Source: Aplysia californica (taxonomy: Eukaryota). From it: a stretch of 64,000 nucleotides of DNA. Below the pieces are notes generated by a model. The model was not told where the DNA came from. It searched no databases and saw nothing but the letters and a program-made list of their open reading frames with translations. Made by a program: the position numbers and the translations under genes. Below are positions 1-28,500 of the stretch, piece after piece; position 1 is the first letter of the stretch; each line of letters begins with the position of its first letter. Location: positions 384,102-448,101 of the forward strand of contig NW_004797808.1 of the NCBI RefSeq assembly GCF_000002075.1, written 5' to 3'.

Positions 1-3000
1 CGGGCCGTGCCACGCTGGGCCAGCAGCAGCAACAAGCCACGCCGCAGCAGATTGTGCCCAAACCCGAGCCAGACCCCAACTACCCCGAGTGGTTGGTGCA
101 TGAGGAGTGGGCTCTCCTTGAGGTGAACTTACACGCACATTCGCAGTAGCAAGCTCAGTTGAGCATTTCTGATTCTCTTTGTCAATATTTTTATTTTGTT
201 ATTTCTGAAGTTTCCATGTCATAGATATGGGTTAAGTGGTGTTGGTGGAGTAACACAGCACACATGTTTTTTAGCCACTGTAACTCTAAAGTGTTGTTGA
301 AGAGTCATGAAAGTATTTTCAGTGGGAAATTAAAGTTGTTAAATAAGTAATTAAAAAAAAATTTTGCCAGATAAAAAAATATTGTAAAAAGACACTTACG
401 ACAAGCTCTTAGGTTTCTTCAATTAACAAACAAGTTGTTGTTATTTTATCTTGTCCGTCTATCTGCTGTGGGTAGGTGGAGGGCGCCACTGGTAGGTCCT
501 ACTTCCTTTCTTTTCCTCTGTTGTCTTCCTTGCACTAAATAGTTGCTGCAGTATGGATATGCTTCTCTTTAACAAGACCTAATTGTCGTACTGCCTCTGA
601 GCTTTGTATGGAAAATATTGTGTTCTTCTCTTCTCTAAGATGCTCCACTAACTATATATAAGGGACATTTGTTGTGTATTAATTAGGTTCTTTGCCATTG
701 CATGCAGAGGTGAGTTATTCCTTCATGGAGACATTTTTTTTGACTGAGATTCTCCATCAAACTGCAGCTGAGGTTTGGTGGGTCAAACGGGTCTGCTTCC
801 CAGGTATCTATATTGTGGGGATGGAGGTGTAGAATTTACAATCGCTGACTGTACGTATGACCACCTTTTGTACACAGGCTGTGCAGCACATCCAGAAGTT
901 GAGCCCTGACCTTCTCATGGACAACCCGGCTCAAATCGTCAACTGGGACTTTGTCTCAGACTTTGTCAGCACTGTGGGGCGCATCTTCCGAGCCGCCAAA
1001 CACTGTCGTTACCAGTACGAGTGTGTTGTGCTCCCCAGAGAAGATGGGAAAATTGTCTACAACATTAAACAGAAGAAGACCCCTAAGAGTATCTATAAGG
1101 TATGTCTTTTTTTTGGTTTTGTTTCCCACACCATTTTTGATACGCAATATGAAACAAGTTTGCGTTGGGAAATTAAAAGTTGTATGAAATGCTGGTCTGC
1201 AAGAAAAGAAAGCGAATTTTGTATGTGTGTTTATCTTTATTGTATCTTCTGCCTATAGATTGTTTTAAACGTAAAATGATTTATTTGCTACTTGAAGGTT
1301 TCTTGGTATGCAAATAATTTAAAAATGAGTATATTGAGTCCATCTATAGGGAACGCGTTCCTTTATTGTTTGAATTGTGTAAAAATGAAAGGAACTGTTT
1401 GTATCCTAGAGTACTTCTTTCATTCTGTTCAGACCAAGAACGTACGTCCACTGCGTACGGAGCAGCTGTACTCGCAGGAAGGGCTGAAGAACTACTCTCA
1501 CCTGTATGACAACCGCTTCACATCCATGATGGAGATTGGCTCCAAGCGACCCGCAGCAATGAGGCAGACCATTGTCAATCCTGCGGCCAAGCCGACGAAG
1601 CACGCCGTTATCCTGGCCGAACACGGCATCAACTACGATAACCCGATGACCCCCAGCCAGCTGGCCACCAAACGTGCCGAGAGGATTGCAGCCGACAAGA
1701 AGAAGCAGCAGCAGCAGCAGCAGCAGCAAGCTCAGCAGCAGGCCCAGGCAGCCTCAGCGGTAGGTGGTGCAAGTGGTTCATTTTATTTGAAAAGACGTGT
1801 GTATATATATAGGTGTGGAGACTGGGAAAAGCTTTTGACATGAGAACATTTTGTCAAATGACATAGTCAGACCTCAGTTTGCCTAAGCTCATGATTTTGT
1901 CTTGGCTTAGCTTTTTCTTTCAAAGAAATAGGTGTTAAGAAATCTTGTTTATGCAAATGGTTGATCTATAGCACAGTGATTTAAAAGACCCTTTGAATCA
2001 TCGTCATTGTCATATTTAAAATGCATCTATTCAAAGAGTTGACAACTTGTTACAGTTGCCGTTGTTATTGTGGAACTGAGATGAAGCTTGCTTTTTCTGT
2101 ATATCAAATGTCTGGTTTTAACTCAGAAGAAATTCAGGTCTTTTTGTGCAAGTGGAATTTGTTTTATGGTGAAGGGCGATGTGCATGATATAATATAATA
2201 TAAAGACTGTTGTGTGAGTGGTCTGATGTCTGTAAATAATGGGGGGGGGGGGGGGGGGGGGGGGTTCCCAAGAGACTGGTAAAGACAGGGGAAAACTGTA
2301 TTTAATGAGGTCTAATATCAGTTCACAATATGTGGAGGATGGTTTGAGTACTGCAAAAGAAAAGTTTTCTTATAAGGACATTAACATAGAGTGAAGGTCT
2401 TGTGTGGTTTGTTTTGTGTCCAAAAGATTTAAATGTGAAAGTGAGTCTAAAATAAGTTTGTAGAAGTGTATACGTTGATGTGCACATGGGTGTTTGTGTG
2501 TGTTCATTTTGGTGGTTCAGTATGTGTGTCACAGTGTGTGCTTGTGCGTGTGTTGTATGCTGTAGCTGCAGTAGTCATCTGTGTTGATGAGACAACTTCC
2601 AACCCACCCCTCAGAATGCCAGCCAGGATGCTGCGGCTGTGGCACAGAGAACTGGCCAGGCTGGTCTGGCTGCTGCTCCTGGGGTCACTCCGACCATCCA
2701 AGGCCAGCCACTCTCCTCCATTGTTTCCGTCACACCCACCACTGTCATTGTAAGAACATTTCCCCCAAGGCACGCTCGCACACACTTCTCTACTCAACTG
2801 ACTGCTTTGTTCCAGGTTTCATGGTCTGAAAATGTACATGAAACAAAGCAAATTTGTTTTAAGGGACTTTCTAAAGAACAAAGTAGTTCAAAAGTGTCTT
2901 GATTTATGTTTCAAAAAATGTATTTGTGCCATGCTCTTTCAATAGATATCTTTCTTTGTCAAAGTCAGCTTGTCATCATTAGCCTTCAGCTCGTTGTTTC

Positions 3001-6000
3001 ATTGAGTCATTTTAATCTAACTTAAAAAAACATGGCCACAGAAGAACAGATTTTTAATTGGATAAAGTGATAGTTCTTTGTAAGCAAAATTTTGACTTTT
3101 GAGATGTTTGGAAAACTTGCTCGCTTTTTTTGGATTAAATTGTCTTTCTTTTTTATTTAATAACTAATGTATATCTTTGGTGAATGCTGTAGAGAAGTGT
3201 GTGGGTGTGTGCCCTAAACATGTATCACACATGTATATAAATAAACATATGCATGCCAGTGGGTATGTGATGGTGAACTGTGGTGTGTGACACTTTTTTC
3301 TGTGGCTTACTGTTCACAGCCAGGTCAGATGTCCAAGGTGGGCCTGAGGACGCTGGGAGCGGCAACAGGGAACATCATAGTGAACACGTCGACGGGTCTG
3401 CAGTCTGGACCGTTTGCTGCCATCAACAAGAGAATGTCACAGGCCGCTGCCTTGCCCTCCACCATTGTGAGTATGCCTCTGTAGCTGCATGAATGTCCTC
3501 TTATTTTATTTTCCTATAGTGTGTAAAAGCAAGTTAAGTGCATGAAAAGTACCACTACAGTGGGAACCATTTATAACAGGCCTGGTAATAACAGGGATCC
3601 GGTAATAACAGGGATTTTTTAAATCCCCGTTTTTTTCCTACTCTTTGTCTCTGTTAAAAGTTATCGACAATAACATGGCCTCATCGGAGCCCAATCGGTT
3701 ATAGCAGGGACAAAGGCTAGTTAACAATGTGTAAAAAGTAAGAGAGATGGAGCAAGCCCACGCAAGCCGTGCCACTGCAAGCACACACAGCGTGTGAAGC
3801 GAGAGAGGGCTGCAGTGTTCTGCAGACCTCGATCTAGCCCGAAACCTAGCAACACGCACACGTAATGTGTCATGCGCAGGCCTGCCGCATGGCCAAATCT
3901 GGTCGTGCGTTATTACTCCCTTGCAACACCTCTAATCTTCGGCACTTCTATGACCATGTTGCAAGTGCCATAAAACTGTTACTAAAACTTATTTTAAAAA
4001 TTTTCCAAGAGGGACTTTTTACAATGTGCAACCACCCCCCACCTCCCCACCTAGAGTGTGCTCACATTACAGTTATACTTTTAATTGAGTTTTTCAAAGG
4101 AAATGTGTTATTTGCTGCTGTAGTTCACTTTGCAGGATAATGATGATAAAATCTACACTTCAGTCTTGATGAAGTTGATGATTAATATAATTTGTTCTGA
4201 ATTCTGCTCATGTGAAAATTCAAGTAAGTATCTGAGACTAAAGTGCTGAAATTCTATTAAACAAAGTAAATAATCCCCTTCAATTTTTGCATTTTTGCAT
4301 TCTAAATAGTGAATTCCGTTTTCAATCTTAAAACATTTTTTAAAAAATTGCTTCACATGTTTGTGGCCTTGTGAGTTTACATAGGCAGGTGTAGAAGACA
4401 AGGAGAAAAATCATATTTTTTGTAGGGTGCAATTTTAGTTGAAATTACACAAGGATCAAGTTAGGATTCAGTGTCATCAACATCAAGTTTTAATCTTATT
4501 TTTTTATACTGTTTTGAGATGAATATCGACACTTGATTTGTTTCAGTTCGAAGATGCGAATTGAAACATTGTGAACTGAATTTTGGTAAACCAATTGTTG
4601 TACACTGAATTTGGTTACTTTAGTGCAACCATTCTTCCTTTTAGATTTGACAGTAATGTGAGCCTCATGTATTTTTACTAATTGATGTAAGACAGAAATC
4701 CTAAGATACATTACACTATTTCCAAAATTTATATATAAGTCATTCTCAACCACAGGATTGTGATGATAAACATTCACACTTCAGTCTTTATGAACTTGCT
4801 GATTCGTACGTTTGTTACTGAATCCTGTTTGCGAAAAGAGTTCTAGATCTAAGCTTTTTCAACTCCGGTATGGCGTTATAGGGTAGGTGTTTTTACAGCT
4901 CTATTGACACGGTAATGCACATGTAAGCAAGCAACAGCAACTAAATTGTCTATGCCTCTGCTAACTTGAGTTGATTTTTGTTTGAATTGAAATATAATGT
5001 TTAGCTGTCAGATATTGAAGGATTGTTAGTTTATCTTTCTTTAAGCGTAGCCACATGTTCATGAATGATGTAAAAACCCAAACAAAACTTGAAAGCTTGG
5101 AGAGTTTTATAAGTTTTCTTCATTTGTAGCAAAAGTGAGAAATGGGTTGGTGGGTGTTGTGGTGTGGTATGTACCTATCTTTTTGAGGATCATGATGATA
5201 GATATTCACACTTCAGTCTTTATGAATGTGCTGATTCAAATAGTTTGCCACTGAATCCTGACTAATGACTTGTCTGTCTTCCACACAGCGCTATAGACAC
5301 AGTAATGTGCATGTTAGCAACAGCAACAAAATTGTCTATGTCTCTGCTAACTTGGGTTGATTTTTGTTTGAATTGAAGTTGTTATCGATCCAGATTTGAA
5401 TTGAAGTATAATGTTTAGCTGTCAGACATCGAAGGATTGTTGGTGGGTGTTGTAGAGTGGTATGTATGTATCTTTTTACTTTCACTCTTTAAACATGTAT
5501 TTGTAATCTGTTCCCTGTAAAATGTCTTAATGCGAGTGGTTAAACGGCACCTCTGGTAGGCCCTACTTCTTTACTCACCAACTTTTATTTCTGTCAGTCA
5601 TTCTTCCTTTTTCCTAGAGCTAAATGATATTGTCTTTGTGCTTCTTCCTAAGCAAACTATAGTCATGGCTGTTAGTGTACAACTCAACAACACCATACAC
5701 CATGCACATGTGGGGAAAATGGGGTGGAAAAGTGGATTCTCAAACGAACTCAACAGCAGGATTGTGATGATAAACATTCACACTTCAGTCTTTATGAACT
5801 TACTGATTCGTACGTTTGTTACTGAATCCTGTTTGTGATAAGAGATCTAAGGTTTTGTTTCTGTCTGTCTTTCTTGCTTTTTTTTGTGCTTCCCCCTGAG
5901 CAAACCATATCCACGACTGTTAGTGTACAACTCGACAACACCGTGCACGTGGGGGGGGGATTCTCAAATGAACTCAACAGCAGGATCATGATGATAAATA

Positions 6001-9000
6001 TTCACACTTCAGTCTTTATGAATGTGCTGATTCAAATAGTTTGCCGCTGAATCCTGACTAATGACTTATCTATCTTCCACACAGCTTGGTGGATTGAAAT
6101 AATCCATAAGAGACATGTGTTTTTTTAAAGGGGAAAATTGTGGGTCTTCGTGACTTGTTATTTTGTTTCATACTGCGTTCCTTTTATGCAAAGAGGCTCC
6201 AGATTGGGAATTTCCGTCTATGAGGCTAACCTTTGTGTAAGACCTATTTGATGTACATATTTTGAACCTCATGATGTAGCATTACTTTAACAGAAATAGC
6301 TCCAGCGTACGTGCATCCCTCACTGCTTTTCAAAGTTAAGCTTATACAACCCAGCCTTTGTCCGAGAAATTCCCCCCTTTTTGCAATGTTGCCTGACAAT
6401 TGTCATTCTGCTATGTGTTTGTGATGTTCCTGATATGATAGCCCTAAACTTAAGAACTAAGAACTAATAAACCAAGCACTGGTGTAATGCATACTTTTTG
6501 CTTTTTGCATCACAGGCCGTGTCTGCCAACCTGACCCCCGCCATCCGTGGCCAGCGTCCGGCGGTGACGGTCACTCCCACCATCACCATGCAGGACCTGA
6601 CAGCTATCCCGGGCACCACCACAGCGGTCACCGTGGCCTCACAGGCTGCTGCGGCCGCGGCTGCTCGGTCAGCACTCCAGACCACCGTGGCCTCCTCCAG
6701 TCTCGCAGCAGGTCAGCTAACCACCCAAAAGTTAGCAGCTATCGCTGGCCCTGGGAGTGAGTAGACTTATCTAACACACGCACACACAATCTGATGTTTC
6801 TTGCATGAGTGTTGTACTCCTGTGCGTGCTGTGTGCTTTGGCTCACACAAAGCTTCTGTGGTGTAATAGCTAGGCTTTCTTTGCTGTTGCGCGCTGATGG
6901 GAGTTGGATTCTTGACTTAAGAAGTTACAGACGAAATACTGCCCAAGATTTACTCTTAAATTTAAGATTAAACGACATATTATTTTTATCAGATTGATAA
7001 TCAGGTTTCTCCAAACAATTCAAACGAGAGCAGTTTAAAAAAGGAGAAAAAGAGCATGAATTTACCAATCCCATTACTATACTGAGCAGATTTGTTGTTG
7101 GGAATCGTCTTTAGTTGAATTCTTCTTTAAAATAAGCTGATAGCTAAAAATTTGTCAGTTTGAATCAAAGAGACTTGCAAGTTGAAATAGATGCAGTGTG
7201 AACATCAGTTAATGTTTATTTTGATTGTCTAGGACTTTATTCACTATTGGTTATCTTAACGTGTACACTTGTTCTTCTTTTTGCTGTTTTCGACATGTAG
7301 TCTTATAGCATGCTGAGTGTGTATGTGTGTAATGTTTGCAATTTATGGAGTTGAGAGAGGCATGTTCAGTCCTCTACTTCAGTGAAATAATTTGAAGACC
7401 TATTATACTCTTAACATCATAGATATGTGCTGCTGAGTGTAGAGTAGTTGCTTTTAACCTGGGTTCGCTCAAACCCAAGGGGTTCTACGAGTCAATCTCA
7501 GCAATTCAGTGGAGGTTCAGACATGTTTTGTGTGTGTGTATCTATTCCTTCCACTCCTCTCGAAGGGTTCAGTTAATGTACATGGGAGGTTCAATTCCTC
7601 CAACGAGGTTGAGAACCACTGTTGTAGATGGATAAGACATGAAGCGGCATTTTGCCGTATCGTCTCTCTTGACTGAAATAAATATCTAGCATGAATACTT
7701 TTCTTTTTTGTTCAGCTTTTGATGTAGATATATGTGTTGGTTTTTTATTTGTTGTTCATTTCAAAGGATTGTGTGTTACTCTGTTTTGCTACCTTCCATA
7801 GGTTTGTTACTAATATAGTTATGGTCCTGCATGATTTACATGTCTATCTGTTGGCTCTCCTCCCAATGTGACCAATGAGTATACTGTGCTTTTAAATGAC
7901 AAAAAACATCAGAATGAGGGATAAGAAAGAGCTGGTGATGTAGAACTATTTCATTTTTTAAACATGTTTTTTTGAGTAAAAAGAAGTTTGTTACTGATTA
8001 ACTCATGTATTGTCTTTTATACATGCAGTTTTAAGAGTGAAGCCCAATGTTAGAGTCATTGCCACAAATTTCCGGTCAGGGAAATACATAACTTCTGAGA
8101 GCATGCTCTAAATTTTAAAGAGGTTCAATTTCAGCTGCATTCAAACATGGTCAGTTGTGCTAAATCTATAGGTGTTTTTTATTTTTTTATTTCTGCTCAG
8201 TTGGTCAGCTATCAGTTGCTTCTTTTCCTTCTGTTTTTAAAAATCATTTTTTGTGAAAATGATTTTAATCCCAAGTTTTTTTTGGTCATAGTTCATGATG
8301 TCTACAGTGCTCTAGAACTCTTCACAGCACTCGTGTCATGTTGTTGAAGACAGCCCCTGTTCACCTCTCCTATTTTGTCACCACCAGCTCTCCAACCTCA
8401 GTTGGTACACGCGACCCGAAGCCTGACCCCGCACCAGATCAACATTCTGCGCCAGAACCAGTCCATCATCCGCACACATGCGGCGGCAGCGGCTGGCACA
8501 CAGCAGATCCGCACACAGAAGCTGCTCAGTCAGGAACAGTTGCGAGCCCAGCCGTTGAAGCATCCCACGCAGAAAGTGATCACACAGCAGCTGCTGGTAC
8601 CTGTCAGAGGTGGTCAGGTGAGGAATTGAATAGTTTCAATGAGATTGAAGGAATTTAGCTAAAGCTTACATGAGATATTTGGGGCTGAACTTCTAACATG
8701 TCTGTATTGTGTACTTGCTTTCTTTCTTTCTTTCTTTCTTTTAGAAAATTAACTGCATAGTCCAATTAATAGTTGGTACAAAATTTGTGCACTTTGGCTC
8801 TTAAAATGAAAAGATAAAGCTTTTTTGCTCACAATTATCTTTCAAAGCAAAGGTAAAAGAAAACAATTGATGTAATAATTCATGGGGTTTAGTTGAACTT
8901 ATGATTTTTCTGGAGAAAAATAATCAGGAAAGTGATTTCAAGTCGAACTGGTCCAAGTTCAAGATTGACCCTAATCACCATTTGGGTTCTTGCATATTTT

Positions 9001-12000
9001 GTTACGACAAGATCATTATGGCCTGTCTTTTTAATATTTTTAAGCCTGACATTTGTTTTTTTGATTTGTAGTTGAAGGAAAATGTAATGCCCCAAGCAAA
9101 TTTTTAATAGAGCAAAACTTGAGTGTAAACTTTGTTGAACTTTTATATTTAATATATCACAAAAAATGTAGAATCACATTGTGAAGCTCAACTGTTCAGA
9201 GATGTTCATGAATTTGTTGGGGTTTTATTTGCTCAGTCCATCCTGCAAGGAGCTAAGCAAGGTCTAATACGTACAACCATCCCCAAGATGACGGACGAGC
9301 AACTTCAGGCTCTGAGAATGAGGACCCAGATCCAGACCCAGACTGGAAAGCAGGTGAGCTAGGGAGACATATGCTGTGTCATGACCATGCACACTTTTGT
9401 CAGTGGTGGCTGTGTGTGCTAGCTGCGATGGAGTATTCATGTTCAGTGGGTTTTTGTGGGGGACTGAAATAGCAAATTTGAACAAAAGGTCAACCAAAGG
9501 ACTGATGGTCAAGTAATGTGAACCTTATTTGGTTTTTGTGGTGGTTGTTGGTAGGGGTGAGGGGGGGTTAATGCCTGTACTAATGCACTTTTAAAATCTT
9601 AGTAAGAATTTATAATTTTTTATGCAACTGATTTTTGGCGTAGTATTAAGATCAATATATTTCCTCCCTTATTCTTTTTGTTTTTAAATCTGAAGTTGTG
9701 TGTGACCTATGGTTTCTCATGACTGACATTTGCTGATTAAAGAATAAGAAACCATATTTTCAAATCTTGTTCCACTCCTGTTTATATTATAAAATTTTAG
9801 TTTAAAATCTTGGTTGATTTAAAGTCTAATTGGATACGTACTCAGGTAGAAATTGGACAAGATTAGTTTTTCCATTAAATGTTCTCACATGTTTGACATA
9901 AACCCTCCGAGCGTTGCTAACAAGTAACCTGTGGTGTCAGGAGAAATTTTATGGTGTCAATATATTTTGGTGGAAAATGCTTGAGAATTGGTAAATCAAG
10001 CACATACAAACCATAAACTTACACAGTTTCAAAAATTACGATCTTCATAGGAAGTAGACTAGTGAAGAAGTCAAAATATTTACAGATAAATAAAACGGGA
10101 TAAACAAAAATGAAATAGTAATTACATGAAATGTGAGATTGCCTCACACCTTACATTGCTTCACATCTTACGAATGAAAGTTTAGTCAAGCTGATGTGTT
10201 GTCTTCACAGATTCAGACAGCCCAGATCATCCAAGGCCAGGTGACTCCTGTTGGTCAGTCTGCAGCCTCCACCTCTCAGTCCCCGGTGGCCCTGGTCAAG
10301 TCTGTGTCGGCCTCCCCGGCGGTGACAGTGCCGGTCAATATCCCAGTGTCCAGCATCAGCGTGGGTCAGCAGAGGACTGTACTAGGTAGGTTTGCCCTGG
10401 TTGGCCCTGTGATGTAGTAGTTCTACAGGGACTTTTGACAACAAGACCTCTTTACTTGTCGGCTGCTTGCCACGAACTGATTAGCAAGATTTTTATGGAG
10501 TCTTTACTGGCTTCCGACATTGGCCAGGGTTTTTACTGTAGGGAAGGCCAAACAATGCATTGCCACGTAAGAATGAATAGAACAAATACCCATATGCACA
10601 TGTATATGGACACACACACGCGCGCACCAACATATCAATCTCTTTACTTTCTCTGACAGGTTTGTCAAGGGCACATGACTGTCTAACAGAACTTGGATAA
10701 GAATTTAACCCCTTTGCTTTTTCCCCCCCAAGACTGCCTCAGGCCTGATTTTACCAACAAACAAACCAACATGTAACTGAAGGCAGTCTTTGACTATATA
10801 CATAAATAGTTTTGACCAAATCGGTTTCAGAAATAAAACTAGAACCGTATTAATTTGACTATGTAATAGTAGCAAAATCCTTTTATGTAATCCTGTTGAA
10901 TGTCAAAGCACTTTCATCATTCAGTAGGTCAAAATAAGCAAGTGTGTTACTGTAGTGGGGTTTGTTTTTTTAAACTTTAAACGAACATTGCATGGATGTT
11001 TAACAACTTGTACTTAAAAATATACAAAAAATAAGGAGAAAAAGGGTTGGAAATCTTGTTCCCGGTCAGCCAGTGATATTGTAGCCACATGTGCAGTTGA
11101 GGTGAATGTCCTGTCCTCCTCAGCATCCCGGGCTACCACAGTGAGCCAGATCCAACAGCAGCAACGCATGCAGCTCCTACACCAACAGAGGAAAGGAGTC
11201 GGTCAGCAGAAAGTGGCAGGTTGGTGCTGGGGCTTTGGCAATGTTGTAGAGTGTTACTCTGACTAGGCAATTTTTTTAATGGTTTCTGAAAGTGTTAAAT
11301 TGATCATTGATTGGGGGGAGGCGAGCGCTGAGTAGCTAACATTTTTTTTTTTTTTAAACCAATCTAGAAATGATTTTTTTTTTTGGAGCAACCTCATTTC
11401 TCATTTTCCAAAGTTTCGTGTAGTAAAAAATATGGTTATCCTTTGAGTTTTGTGTGTTCGACTTGTCTGTGCTCAACTATATCTTGATGGGTTTTAAAAA
11501 TATTTTTAAAAAAAAATTTATTTCAGGTCTGAGTGCTGGCAAAGCCAACCAGTTCCCTCAGCTGCTGATCCAGCAGAACAGTGTGAGCAAGCAGTTTGTG
11601 CACCAGTTCCTCAACAAGAACCCGGGCACCATCCAGCAGATCATCACCCACAGCTCCCAGCCCACCATCATCACACAGGTCTCACAGGCTGGGGGGCAGC
11701 CCATCACGCAGATGGTGGCAAAGGTCCGATTTTTTTGTCAGCCTCCTTTAGATGATCAAATAATGTTGATAGCGCTGTTGAACAGTTACACTTACTTACT
11801 TCCCTACTTGTGTACTCTCTCTCTCTCTCTCTCCCTTTTCCGTCAAGGTCACAAGAAGGAGAGCAGGAGATTACCCGTGGGTGGTTGGTGGGTGCTCTGG
11901 TGGCTTGCTCCTTCTTTCCTATCTAACATCTATCGTCTTTATCTTCCCTTCTTCTTTTGTGTTTGTTTCTATCTTGTAACACTTTTTATCTTCGGCACTT

Positions 12001-25574: not shown

Positions 25575-28500
25575 TCAGTGGTGGCCTCCATGCAGAGCTT
25601 CACTGCCTTCTTCATAGCCCTCCGGCAACGCGTTGTAATAGCCATTGTGGAACAGGGAGTGGTTGCCATCTGACCATGGGAAGGGCTGAAAAAGACAAAG
25701 TGTCACCAAATTTTATTTTATGAACAAAAAACAAAACCATTCAGATTGGGACTATAATAGAGAGCATGTAAGTTCTTTTTTAAAGTTTTAGTAGAGGTTT
25801 TACTGCACTCGCAACTGCATAAGGTCATATGAGCGCCAGAAGATTAGAGGTGTTACAAGGGAGTAACAAACATAAAAAAGAACGAGGGGAGAAAAGGACA
25901 ATTGATATTTGATTGGAGAGAAGAAGCAAACCACACCAGAGCACCTGCCAATCGCCCACTGTAAGTTCTTACACGACAATTTTTAAAAAGTTTCATTCTG
26001 CAAAACCCACCACCTTCGACTGAGGACGGAGGGTGGGAAAATCTGACAAGACCTAGCTAGACAAAAGCGCAGGGTTTTGTACAATGCTCTTCAGCAGCAG
26101 TAGCCTAGAACTTGTTTTCAGTAATGTCGGACAAAAGAAGCAATAAAACAATCAACTTGTCGTAGGCCTACTGGTTTCAGTAAATAAATCCGAACTTTCT
26201 GCTCATTCTGGCAGTGGAAAATCAGCAGTGTTGCAGACCTGCTATAGTCATGCAAACAGCGTACTAAATTTTCTGATTGTTCATCACGTCACATGTAGGC
26301 TACTCGTATACAACGGAACTAATAAAATGCACAATATAGCAAGAAAACAAAATCCATCCAGCAATCACTTGTAAGGGACCCATCTAAGAAAATGACCTCC
26401 TTTCCCATATAGTTGAAATAATCATTACACTAAACTACACAAAAACGAGTGTCAAATATTCTGCATGGCGGCACCCAGTCTTTCCTGAACAGCTGTCATA
26501 ATCTAGCTCCAGAAACTAATAAATGTTCAAAATAAATATGACAAATTTCTGTTCCATATGAAAGGCACATCAATCTCTTGAGAATTTTGGCGTCAATCTT
26601 TTACCTCTTAGTCAGTTTTTTAAATAAAAAGTGGCAGCCATGAAATGTGTGAAACGCTCGCAAATTGGCTGCAACCCCATGTTGGACAGACAATAAAGCA
26701 GTAGCTTACCCGCAGTACCAAACATCCACATACAAATGAACATAGTACAATCACAGTAATGCAGATTTGGAGCCTAATTTTTCTCCAAGCCTTTGAGACC
26801 ATTGCAAATGAGTGTTTTATTGCCCCAAACATGTTCCTTTGTATTTTAGGCAAAAACACTGAGTCCTATCCCAACCAGAGGCACACCGCCATCTGTAGCG
26901 AGCGGTACGGTCCTATATTATACTGTGTACAAACTGCTCCATGTTGCGAGGTCTTAACATTTTTGGAGTTCTAAAGAAGGGAGGAGGCAAAATTTTCCAA
27001 AGCTGATGACATTATCCCATCTTTCTATTGGTGCCTTTAAAAAAAAAGTATTTTACAAAGAGTGAAACCCTGTTATACCGCCTACACCGGGACCAGCATT
27101 TAGCTGGCGGTACAACCAGGTTTTCATGTCCCCTTTTAAATACATGGACCACCGCTTGACCAAAGTCAAGGTGACTTGTTAACCAATCACTACATGAATT
27201 AATAATGAGCTATAAAAATCCCTTTGGACTGTCACTTGAGAGTGAGTCCTTACTAAATAAAACATAAAAGCCCCACGGGCATTCCCCTGTTTGTAAGCTA
27301 TTGAGTTGATATATAGGTCGCCCTTTAAAGTTTCTTCAGACAACTTAAAATTTAATTCCACTTTTTAAAAATACAGTCGAACCTGAGTAAGACGGCCACC
27401 CATTGTCAAGGAGAAAAGAGGCCGTTTAAGGCAGGACTGATCAAGATGAAGAAAACAAACCATTACTTTCTGAGGTCCCAACCAAAAGTAGCCGCATTGT
27501 TGTTGTTGATATTGTTTTTGTTTTCGCTGGGGGGGGGGGGTCTTTTGTTGCTGCTTTTGTGCAAGGGTGACAATAAAACGAAATGGACTGATCTCGTGCT
27601 ATGGTAAAACAAACACACGGGTAGCCACCACTCGGAGAATGAACGACGCTTCCGTCACAAGTTCATGTTTACGTCCATTGTTACCTTTGTTACAGACTGG
27701 GTAAACAGTGACCACTCATCTCACTTACGATTTGTGTATGAGTTCTGGGCGGGGCTTATGGGTTTTGAGGGATCGCATGCTTACCTCACCAGCAGCTGAA
27801 AATTTGTTACCTATAGTTCAACTGTGGGAGGGGCCTACGCAACATGAATCGGTTGGATGGACTACCTAACAACGCCAGGGGCCAATGCATATATTTATGA
27901 CAAAACGTAATGGCGTCACTAAGGAGGCCGTCTAAGACAGGTGTTATTGTTTGGTGTGATAGGGGTTGTGTGTTAAAGTATGGTGGCCGCGGCCGCCTTG
28001 GACAGGTGCCCGTTTTACACAATTAAATTATATAGAAAAAAAAGGAAAGGGGGGAAATGGAAAGTGGCTGTTTGTACAGGTGGCCGTCAGGGCAGGTTCA
28101 ACTGTATTGACCAATAAAAATAAAAGCATTTTCATAACCAGCTTGTCAAATTTATTCGAATTCACGTGGGGAGCAAAATTTAATGCTTAATTAAGTAATA
28201 TTTTATTTCAATTGTACTCTTCTATGTAACACATTGTATTGCATTCACTTGTGGTACATTACATCACTGTAGCTCTATCTATAGGCCTATTGTTTGAAAT
28301 CTACAAGACAAGGCTGGGGAGGAGAGATGAGTTGGGAGGGAGCAAATCGGTGAAAAGTATTTTGATCTAGACCTAGACCACAGAGACATCTGTGAGAGAT
28401 TGTCAAGCAACCACCCATTGGATGTGCCATGCGCCTTGTGTAGCCTAACGTGTACTGTGTACTTCCAGCGGCCAGTTCATGGCAGTACAGCAGAGTAAAT

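What the first reader, a model, noticed from the sequence alone, without database searches (positions are those of the whole stretch)
4132..6056. Five paralogous box C/D snoRNA-like genes in a single EP400 intron
Seen: five ~75-nt sense-strand units in intron 3467-6515. Each has box C (RTGATGA), D' (ATGA), a degenerate C', box D (CTGA) and a CAGGAT/ATCCTG-type terminal stem, in the order divergent-a-b-a-b. The boxes and the D' guide ACACTTCAGTCTT are conserved even in the divergent copy 1, while the D-side segment has drifted, which suggests selection on an RNA. Known: vertebrate intronic snoRNAs are generally one per intron and are released by debranching and exonuclease trimming; human EP400 hosts a different, H/ACA snoRNA (SNORA49). 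Inference: several snoRNAs in one lariat need endonucleolytic separation or internal splicing, or else give sno-lncRNA-like molecules capped by snoRNPs at both ends.
Basis: partly seen in the sequence, partly recalled or inferred. Interest (0 to 1): 0.8.

Follow-up and report, generated by a model that had tools for sequence, protein, structure and literature searches.

The report
Five-copy methylation-guide snoRNA array, sea-slug intron
One intron of the sea slug's EP400/domino chromatin-remodeller gene carries five well-formed copies of a small guide RNA predicted to methylate one adenosine of the large ribosomal RNA; the RNA family is new to the databases, but several guide RNAs in one intron is an arrangement already known from flies and plants.

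Summary
Five sense-strand units of 76-77 nt lie at 4132-4207, 4752-4828, 5185-5260, 5756-5832 and 5981-6056. They sit in an intron (3467-6515) that RNA contigs show to be spliced out.

Each unit has box C, a D' box (AUGA), a C' core, box D and a 5-7 bp terminal stem. All 25 box and guide positions are identical in the five copies, while the other positions are only 59-66% alike between the three lineages.

The invariant guide pairs over 12-13 bp, in the canonical register, with this genome's own LSU rRNA. It predicts 2'-O-methylation of the A in GAAG-A-CUG. The fly map lists no site between Gm1692 and Am2183, and I recall none at this position in yeast or human.

No Rfam family reaches its threshold. 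Genome-wide the family consists of these five copies plus three truncated retrocopies, so it is not a transposon.

The framing needs correcting. The genome is Aplysia (927.3 Mb), not a vertebrate, so the one-snoRNA-per-intron rule does not apply. Multi-snoRNA introns are known in Drosophila, plants and Plasmodium, and this scan has already noted similar arrays elsewhere in this genome, including H/ACA arrays in the same gene.

Neither the discrete ~76-nt RNAs nor the methylation could be shown with the available reads. Verdict: a real but ordinary snoRNA gene cluster and a new family.

The parts
3467..6515 (+). Host intron of the EP400/domino-type gene
   Evidence: GTGAGT donor and CAG acceptor. 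Contigs of runs X7 and X6 join 3466 to 6516, GT..AG, skipping 3049 bases.
857..1843 (+). Two upstream coding exons that identify the host (ORFs 857-1258 and 1292-1843)
   Evidence: phmmer against PDB chains: human EP400 residues 2377-2440 (E 2e-11) and 2436-2541 (E 1.4e-18). The exons were searched apart and not joined.
4132..4207 (+). Unit 1 (divergent copy), box C/D snoRNA gene
   Evidence: C 4140-4146, guide 4156-4167, D' 4169-4172, perfect C' TGATGA, D 4197-4200. 91.4 bits with model R1. Its guide extends to 15 Watson-Crick pairs with 1 mismatch on the LSU.
4752..4828 (+). Unit 2 (type a)
   Evidence: C 4760-4766, guide 4777-4788, D' 4790-4793, C' core 4799-4805, D 4818-4821. 103.2 bits. 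7-bp terminal stem.
5185..5260 (+). Unit 3 (type b)
   Evidence: C 5192-5198, guide 5209-5220, D' 5222-5225, C' core 5231-5237, D 5251-5254. 99.4 bits. Terminal stem reduced to 5 bp.
5756..5832 (+). Unit 4 (type a)
   Evidence: C 5764-5770, guide 5781-5792, D' 5794-5797, C' core 5803-5809, D 5822-5825. 100.8 bits.
5981..6056 (+). Unit 5 (type b), 459 nt upstream of the 3' splice site
   Evidence: C 5988-5994, guide 6005-6016, D' 6018-6021, C' core 6027-6033, D 6047-6050. 101.5 bits. It is the source type of the three retrocopies.
4930..5948 (+). Duplicated spacer blocks between the units
   Evidence: Repeat families D4-D7: 4930-5030 and 5146-5184 recur at 5316-5477, and 5630-5700 recurs at 5878-5948, at 82-95% identity. 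The array therefore grew by local segmental duplication, not by retroposition.

Best explanation
These are five paralogous genes of one box C/D snoRNA family. They are transcribed as part of the pre-mRNA of the Aplysia EP400/domino gene and released from its 3-kb intron. Each RNA would bind the Snu13/Nop56/Nop58/fibrillarin core at its C/D and C'/D' motifs. It uses only the D' guide, which pairs with LSU rRNA 5'-GAAGACUGAAGUG-3'. The nucleotide opposite the fifth guide position upstream of D' (AUGA) would be 2'-O-methylated: the A in GAAG-A-CUG, position 1706 counted from the Rfam LSU start in this genome. The D-side spacer has no target and drifts freely. The array arose by local tandem duplication: an old split separated unit 1, type a and type b, and the a and b units were then duplicated recently. 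Release of five RNAs from one intron needs cuts in the spacers followed by exonuclease trimming up to each snoRNP, as assumed for the intronic clusters of flies and plants. Shown here: the anatomy, the conservation pattern, the rRNA complementarity, splicing of the intron, restriction to a single locus, and past existence of the type-b sequence as RNA (retrocopies). Inferred: snoRNP assembly, the methylated nucleotide and the processing route.
For: All defining motifs are present in all five copies, with consistent spacing: C to D' 22-23 nt, D' to C' 5 nt, C' to D 12-13 nt. Box and guide positions are 25/25 identical in every pair, stem positions 10-12/12, and other positions 24-27/41 between lineages. 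The guide gives 12 Watson-Crick pairs plus one G-U wobble, starting at position 1-2 from D', at a single site in the LSU of both rDNA copies read. Only 3 of 2000 shuffled guides do as well. All units are sense to the host, and the intron is spliced. A whole-genome DNA search and a whole-genome covariance-model search find only these five full copies. Three chimeric retrocopies start at the expected mature 5' end (AGGAUC..., 6 nt before box C), two of them with target-site duplications. This shows that type-b RNA existed in the germ line. In run X7, bins over the b units have depth 7.6-12.5 against 13-16 on the exons, while most of the intron has 0; this is weak evidence.
Against: No read evidence exists for a discrete ~76-nt RNA. 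The only raw-read run was poly(A)-selected and empty here, and contigs cannot show RNA ends. No Rfam family reaches gathering; the best is 26.4 bits against a cut-off of 38, so there is no support from a characterised homologue. D' (AUGA) and C' (CUGAUUC in four copies) are degenerate. The predicted site is absent from the Drosophila map, which has nothing between Gm1692 and Am2183, and by my own recollection is not methylated in yeast or human. No orthologue from another species could be obtained. Unit 3 has a weakened stem.
Confidence: 0.75

Rival explanations
1. The array mainly yields long, stable, non-polyadenylated RNAs capped at both ends by snoRNPs (sno-lncRNA-like, for example from unit 3 to unit 5). 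This would happen because the debranched intron is trimmed only from its ends and no endonuclease separates the internal units.
For: In run X7 the non-repeat intron depth is confined to 5124-6036, from unit 3 to unit 5. It reaches 4-12 against 13-16 on the exons, and is zero in 4098-5123 and 6150-6491. The units lie 459-2308 nt from the 3' splice site, which is far from the short distance that favours splicing-coupled release in vertebrates (my knowledge of Hirose and Steitz 2001).
Against: The contig ends at 5855 and 6027-6039 recur in the DNA run X1, so assembly at repeats sets them, not RNA ends. Unit 4 itself has no X7 contig. Run X6 shows a different, pre-mRNA-like pattern. Flies and plants make free snoRNAs from such clusters.
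Confidence: 0.1
2. The units are real snoRNAs, but the D' box lies a few bases upstream (CUUU/CUUG or UCUU). The methylated nucleotide would then be one of the two A's of CUG-AA-GUG rather than the A of GAAG-A-CUG.
For: D' boxes are often degenerate, and the complementarity also covers those A's.
Against: The duplex would then run into the box and leave only 8-9 bp upstream of it. AUGAA is invariant in all five copies, while the base before it varies T/G. AUGA keeps the UGA core of CUGA and lies 5 nt from C'. By my offset count from the conserved GUAGUA-GC motif, neither A falls at a site in the fly map, which has none between Gm1692 and Am2183.
Confidence: 0.08
3. The copies are relics: a duplicated snoRNA family that is no longer expressed or assembled, or of which only one copy still works while the rest decay by birth and death.
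For: There is no direct evidence of mature RNA. Unit 3 lost one stem pair and unit 4 has a change next to the C' core. b/b and a/a copies are so recent that their conservation says nothing.
Against: Three lineages that are about 40% diverged at free positions keep all 25 box and guide positions (P about 1e-5). Even the oldest copy, unit 1, has a perfect C' box and the longest guide match.
Confidence: 0.06
4. The unit is part of a mobile element, or a chance resemblance.
For: Three further partial copies exist on other contigs, each fused to an abundant retroposon.
Against: Those copies lack box D and the 3' stem, derive from type b (98-100% identity) and are secondary. There are no other hits in 927 Mb by DNA or covariance-model search. 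All full copies lie in one intron in one orientation.
Confidence: 0.01

Closest known systems
Intronic snoRNA gene clusters of Drosophila melanogaster (Huang et al. 2004 J Mol Biol 341:669; 2005 RNA 11:1303) and of rice/Arabidopsis
   Same: Several snoRNA genes, often paralogues made by tandem duplication, lie in one intron on the sense strand of a protein-coding host. They need separation inside the excised intron.
   Different: This case is in a mollusc, a group for which I found no published snoRNA survey in the held library. The host is a chromatin remodeller, not a ribosome-related gene. I saw only the titles of the fly papers; the plant and Plasmodium statement was read in PMC2656528.
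Generic Rfam box C/D families (best: snoZ122 RF00343, SNORD91, SNORD73, SNORD51/52)
   Same: Box C, box D, terminal stem and overall length all align.
   Different: Scores are 15-26 bits against gathering cut-offs of 37-70, and the guides do not match. The unit is therefore not a member of any curated family.
Human SNORA49 in EP400 (intron between exons 28 and 29; PMC12824223)
   Same: The host gene family is the same, and the snoRNA is intronic and on the sense strand.
   Different: SNORA49 is a single H/ACA pseudouridylation guide, whereas this is a five-copy box C/D array in a different part of the gene. There is no sequence relationship.
Mammalian sno-lncRNAs (two snoRNAs in one intron protect the sequence between them; review PMC5054931 listed, not read)
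   Same: There is more than one snoRNA in one intron, which is the precondition for such RNAs.
   Different: No RNA bounded by two units was demonstrated here. The X7 depth pattern is only suggestive.
LINE-mediated chimeric retrocopies of small nuclear/nucleolar RNAs (Buzdin-type template-switch chimeras; my own knowledge)
   Same: The three extra copies have a small-RNA 5' part that starts at the RNA's 5' end. It is fused at a microhomology (GTTTGC) to the 3' part of a retroposon with an A-rich tail, and target-site duplications are present.
   Different: All three share one junction, so they may descend from a single event. The partner LINE was not identified.

Membership tests
Box C/D snoRNA (fibrillarin guide RNA) | Box C RUGAUGA near the 5' end and box D CUGA near the 3' end | tested here: met
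   ATGATGA or GTGATGA, and CTGA, are present in all five units and invariant apart from the R position.
Box C/D snoRNA (fibrillarin guide RNA) | Short terminal stem that brings C and D together | tested here: met
   The stem is 5-7 bp and 94% of cells are paired, against 25-49% when the partner columns are slid. One pair changes on both sides and one changes G-C to G-U. The stem is present in 4 of 5 minimum-energy folds.
Box C/D snoRNA (fibrillarin guide RNA) | Internal D' and C' boxes | tested here: inconclusive
   D' is AUGA (3 of 4 positions, UGA kept) and invariant. C' is a perfect UGAUGA in unit 1 but CUGAUUC in the other four, with the UGAU core kept. The spacing is 5 nt. The boxes are degenerate, as often seen, but not proof.
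Box C/D snoRNA (fibrillarin guide RNA) | At least 10 nt of complementarity to rRNA or snRNA ending 1-2 nt from D or D' | tested here: met
   There are 12 Watson-Crick pairs plus 1 G-U wobble from position 1 or 2 upstream of D', at a unique site in the genome's own LSU. Only 3 of 2000 shuffles reach this. The D-side spacers have no match of 9 or more Watson-Crick pairs within mature rRNA.
Box C/D snoRNA (fibrillarin guide RNA) | Accumulates as a discrete 60-120 nt RNA bound by fibrillarin/Nop56/Nop58/Snu13 | not testable with these tools
   Only contigs and one poly(A) raw-read run were available.
Box C/D snoRNA (fibrillarin guide RNA) | Target nucleotide is 2'-O-methylated | not testable with these tools
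   No methylation map of Aplysia rRNA was found. The fly map has no site between Gm1692 and Am2183.
Any curated Rfam snoRNA family | Score at or above the family's gathering threshold | tested here: not met
   There are no matches at gathering in the whole window. The best sub-threshold match is 26.4 bits against a cut-off of 38.
Intronic snoRNA gene cluster (fly/plant type) | Two or more snoRNA genes inside one spliced intron, sense to the host | tested here: met
   Five units lie in intron 3467-6515. The 3466->6516 junction is seen in RNA contigs, and no internal GT..AG junction is seen.
Intronic snoRNA gene cluster (fly/plant type) | Each unit is released as an individual mature snoRNA | not testable with these tools
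   An indirect hint comes from the retrocopies, which begin at the expected mature 5' end of type b.
sno-lncRNA | Stable RNA whose two ends are snoRNAs, without cap or poly(A) | tested here: inconclusive
   X7 depth is confined to 5124-6036, but the contig ends coincide with those in the DNA run X1.
Transposable element / SINE | Many dispersed copies in both orientations | tested here: not met
   The genome has 8 hits in total: 5 here and 3 truncated secondary chimeras.

The most novel reading that the evidence does not exclude
Because five snoRNPs sit in one 3-kb intron far from the splice sites, part of the intron survives as snoRNP-capped long RNA, for example from unit 3 to unit 5, about 870 nt. 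This would make the Aplysia domino gene a source of sno-lncRNA-type molecules outside mammals. The X7 depth pattern does not exclude this.
Probability: 0.1. Interest if true: 0.55.

Novelty: new member of a known kind. Interest (0 to 1): 0.3.

Why it matters
The finding adds an uncatalogued box C/D snoRNA family and a testable prediction of a ribosomal methylation site. The site is the A of GAAG-A-CUGAAGUG, 28 nt downstream of the conserved Am/Gm pair in the GUAGUAGC motif, and is not reported in fly, yeast or human. Together with the other arrays noted in this genome, it suggests that gastropods, like flies and plants, routinely pack amplified snoRNA paralogues into single introns. That makes Aplysia a usable system for the old, still open question of which nuclease separates snoRNAs that share an intron in animals. 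On its own the locus is ordinary.

Tried and rejected
- **Rfam at gathering over the window**: nothing.
- **Rfam at E<10 over the array**: only generic C/D hits.
- **First metagenome pattern scan**, box C + guide + D': 0 hits.
- **Second, relaxed metagenome scan**: 10 hits, about the number expected by chance. None has a box D and a terminal stem, and model R1 scores them at 18 bits or less. No orthologue was obtained.
- **Poly(A) raw-read run X22**: no reads on the units, as expected for non-polyadenylated RNA.
- **X1**: it proved to be DNA, with flat depth of about 52x.
- **Pfam on ten + strand ORFs**: no domain, because the tail is low-complexity. Host identity came instead from PDB sequence matches to EP400.
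- **Targets for the D-side spacers** in SSU, LSU, ITS/5.8S and rDNA flanks: only weak matches outside the mature rRNA, taken as chance. snRNAs were not tested.
- **Full-text search for the guide or target strings**: only primers and an rRNA-fragment probe.
- **Supplements of the fly methylation map**: not held.
- **Huang et al. 2005**: not held.
- **Test of other arrays in this genome**: SNORD27 gave two near-threshold copies 4.5 kb apart on contig C10. SNORD25 gave nothing, but only 68 of 50,976 first-look candidates were scored. I therefore could not confirm the large arrays reported in other notes.
- **Transposon and chance explanations**: considered and rejected.
Full report
**What is there**

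Window 3300-6700 holds five direct repeats on the + strand. Aligned, each is a 76-77 nt unit with these parts in order:
- a 5' stem strand (C/G)AGGAT;
- box C (A/G)TGATGA;
- a 22-23 nt spacer ending in the invariant ACACTTCAGTCTT;
- one variable base;
- an invariant ATGAA (D' = AUGA);
- a 5-nt linker;
- a C' core (perfect TGATGA in unit 1, CTGATTC in the other four);
- a 12-13 nt variable spacer;
- box D CTGA;
- the 3' stem strand AT(C/T)CTG.

The order is unit 1 (divergent), a, b, a, b. The stem is paired in 94% of cells, against 25-49% when the partner columns are slid. One G-C has become G-U in unit 1, and one outer pair changes on both sides.

A covariance model of the five (R1), run with filters off over the whole window, scores them 91-103 bits and everything else at 13 bits or less.

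**Selection**

I defined functional columns from the general C/D consensus and from the rRNA complementarity: UGAUGA, the 12-nt guide, the UGA of D', and CUGA, 25 columns in all. On that definition:
- every pair of copies is identical at 25/25 functional columns and 10-12/12 stem columns;
- the three lineages (unit 1, a, b) agree at only 24-27 of 41 other columns;
- none of the 24 variable columns falls in the functional set (hypergeometric P about 1e-5).

The flanks of unit 1, a and b cannot be aligned beyond the units. The a/a and b/b pairs are recent duplicates (2 and 3 differences), so they say nothing about selection. Spacer blocks are duplicated as well (families D4-D7), so the array grew by local segmental duplication.

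**Target**

I took LSU and SSU rRNA and the ITS region from this genome's own rDNA.
- The D' guide pairs with LSU 5'-GAAGACUGAAGUG-3' with 12 Watson-Crick pairs plus a terminal G-U wobble, starting directly at D'. The site occurs once in the LSU and is the same in both rDNA copies read.
- Only 3 of 2000 shuffles of the guide reach 12 uninterrupted Watson-Crick pairs in that register.
- Unit 1 extends the duplex to 15 Watson-Crick pairs with one mismatch, so it is not a decaying copy.
- With D' = AUGA, the fifth-nucleotide rule points to the A of GAAG-A-CUG, LSU position 1706 counted from the Rfam model start.
- The D-side spacers differ between unit 1, a and b and have no convincing rRNA match. 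The RNA therefore looks like a single-guide snoRNA.

**Is the site known?**

The Aplysia LSU context places the target 28 nt downstream of the A in the conserved GUAGUA-GC motif. From my own knowledge, that motif carries yeast Am1449/Gm1450 and human Am2350. The Drosophila map (PMC11014333, table seen) lists Cm1679, Am1691 and Gm1692 and then nothing until Am2183.

The equivalents would be yeast A1477, fly about A1719 and human G2378. That numbering rests on my recollection of the rRNA sequences and on the offsets, not on a tool. By that numbering the site is not a known methylation site, so the prediction is of a lineage-specific one.

**Family membership**

No Rfam family reaches gathering in the window. 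At E<10 the units hit some twenty unrelated C/D families at 15-26 bits, through boxes and stem only. This is a C/D snoRNA by anatomy but belongs to no curated family.

**Copy number and the transposon test**

A DNA search of the 927-Mb assembly finds eight places: the five units and three others on contigs C145, C372 and C133. The covariance model finds the same eight.

The three extra copies carry only the first ~63 nt of type b, at 98-100% identity. They are joined at a 6-nt microhomology (GTTTGC) to the 3' ~140 nt of a very abundant retroposon. That retroposon also lies in this intron at about 3910-3986 and elsewhere in the window, and DNA depth over 3870-3983 is over a million. Two of the copies have target-site duplications (TAGAAGTC and CAAAAGCAG) and A-rich tails.

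They lack box D, so they are dead chimeric retrocopies and not evidence of a mobile unit. They begin at AGGAUC, 6 nt before box C, where a mature C/D snoRNA should start. This is indirect evidence that processed type-b RNA existed in the germ line. It is an inference, and because the three share one junction they may descend from a single event.

**Host and organism**

The + strand ORFs at 857-1258 and 1292-1843 match human EP400 residues 2377-2440 and 2436-2541 (E 2e-11 and 1.4e-18). Pfam sees nothing in the low-complexity tail exons. I searched the exons apart and did not join them.

The assembly has 927,310,431 bases in 4332 contigs. AplCal3.0 of Aplysia californica is given as 927.3 Mb (PMC8861042). 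Earlier notes of this scan call the gene the single Aplysia domino gene. So the host is EP400-like, but the animal is a gastropod, not a vertebrate.

**RNA evidence** (one call allowed)

- Run X1 behaves as DNA, with flat depth of about 52x.
- Runs X7 and X6 each contain a contig that joins 3466 to 6516 (GT..AG), so the intron is spliced as predicted. No internal GT..AG junction appears; the other joints involve repeats.
- The poly(A) raw-read run has no reads on the units, as expected.
- In X7 the non-repeat intron depth is confined to 5124-6036 (4-12, against 13-16 on the exons). This covers units 3 to 5 but not unit 4 itself.
- The contig ends recur in the DNA run, so they are assembly breaks at repeated words and not RNA ends.

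I treat the X7 pattern as an unexplained hint of stable intron-derived RNA, not as proof. Discrete ~76-nt RNAs remain unshown.

**Comparison with what is known**

One snoRNA per intron is the rule in vertebrates and yeast. Clusters in one intron are documented in:
- plants and Plasmodium (PMC2656528);
- Drosophila ('multiple intronic gene clusters', Huang et al. 2004 and 2005, titles);
- chicken, in two cases of identical copies (PMC2770669).

Human EP400 hosts the H/ACA snoRNA SNORA49 between exons 28 and 29 (PMC12824223). Other notes of this scan report many such arrays in this genome: about 19 H/ACA copies in six introns of this same gene, and arrays in HUWE1, CCT4 and SSR1. I confirmed only two SNORD27-like copies 4.5 kb apart on C10. 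I found no paper on mollusc snoRNA organisation in the held library.

**Mechanism**

- Shown: five sense-strand C/D units in one spliced intron, under selection on boxes and guide, with a canonical rRNA duplex.
- Inferred: snoRNP assembly on the nascent or excised intron.
- Inferred: endonucleolytic cuts in the spacers. Exonucleases entering a debranched intron from its ends would stop at unit 1 and at unit 5, so internal units cannot be freed by trimming alone.
- Inferred: trimming to the snoRNP borders, and methylation of LSU A1706.

The units lie 459-2308 nt from the 3' splice site. The short branch-point distance that favours splicing-coupled assembly in vertebrates (my knowledge) is therefore not used here.

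**Verdict**

This is a real feature: a new family of a well-known class, in an arrangement already known outside vertebrates and apparently common in this genome.

Noticed in passing
L003:1500-1712, L004:1498-1703, L005:1509-1715 (contigs C145, C372, C133): Three chimeric retrocopies. Each has the first ~63 nt of the type-b snoRNA fused at a 6-nt microhomology (GTTTGC) to the 3' ~140 nt of an abundant retroposon. Two have 8-9 bp target-site duplications and A-rich tails. They look like reverse-transcriptase template-switch products.
   Followed up: partly
window 3870-3990 (also 57973-58107, 25797-25931, 11905-11993 and others): A very abundant short retroposon, the 'family A' of another note. 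DNA word depth exceeds one million in run X1, and it is strongly represented on both strands in poly(A) RNA (run X22). One truncated copy lies in this intron upstream of unit 1.
   Followed up: partly
window 5124-6036, run X7: Outside repeats, RNA contig depth within the intron is confined to the stretch from unit 3 to unit 5 (4-12 against 13-16 on exons). Unit 4 has no contig, and the rest of the intron is at zero. This may be stable intron-derived RNA or an assembly accident at low depth.
   Followed up: no
window 5466-5579 and 5808-5921: Two short repeat insertions inside the array, with DNA depth 3400-8800 in X1 and many joints of the 5575->5856 type that carry foreign letters between the two sides. 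One sits where a further snoRNA copy would be expected, after the duplicated spacer block 5316-5477.
   Followed up: no
window 3373, 6000, 6189-6345, 6617 (run X6, 'organism B'): A run labelled as another organism differs from the window by about 1-2% in the intron and at two exon positions. Its only change inside unit 5 (6000 A>G) lies in the non-functional spacer between box C and the guide.
   Followed up: no
G000:C10:85510-85581 and 90073-90148 (L021, L022): Two SNORD27-like box C/D units lie 4.5 kb apart on the same strand, just under the Rfam gathering score (50.9 and 49.8 bits against 52).
   Followed up: partly
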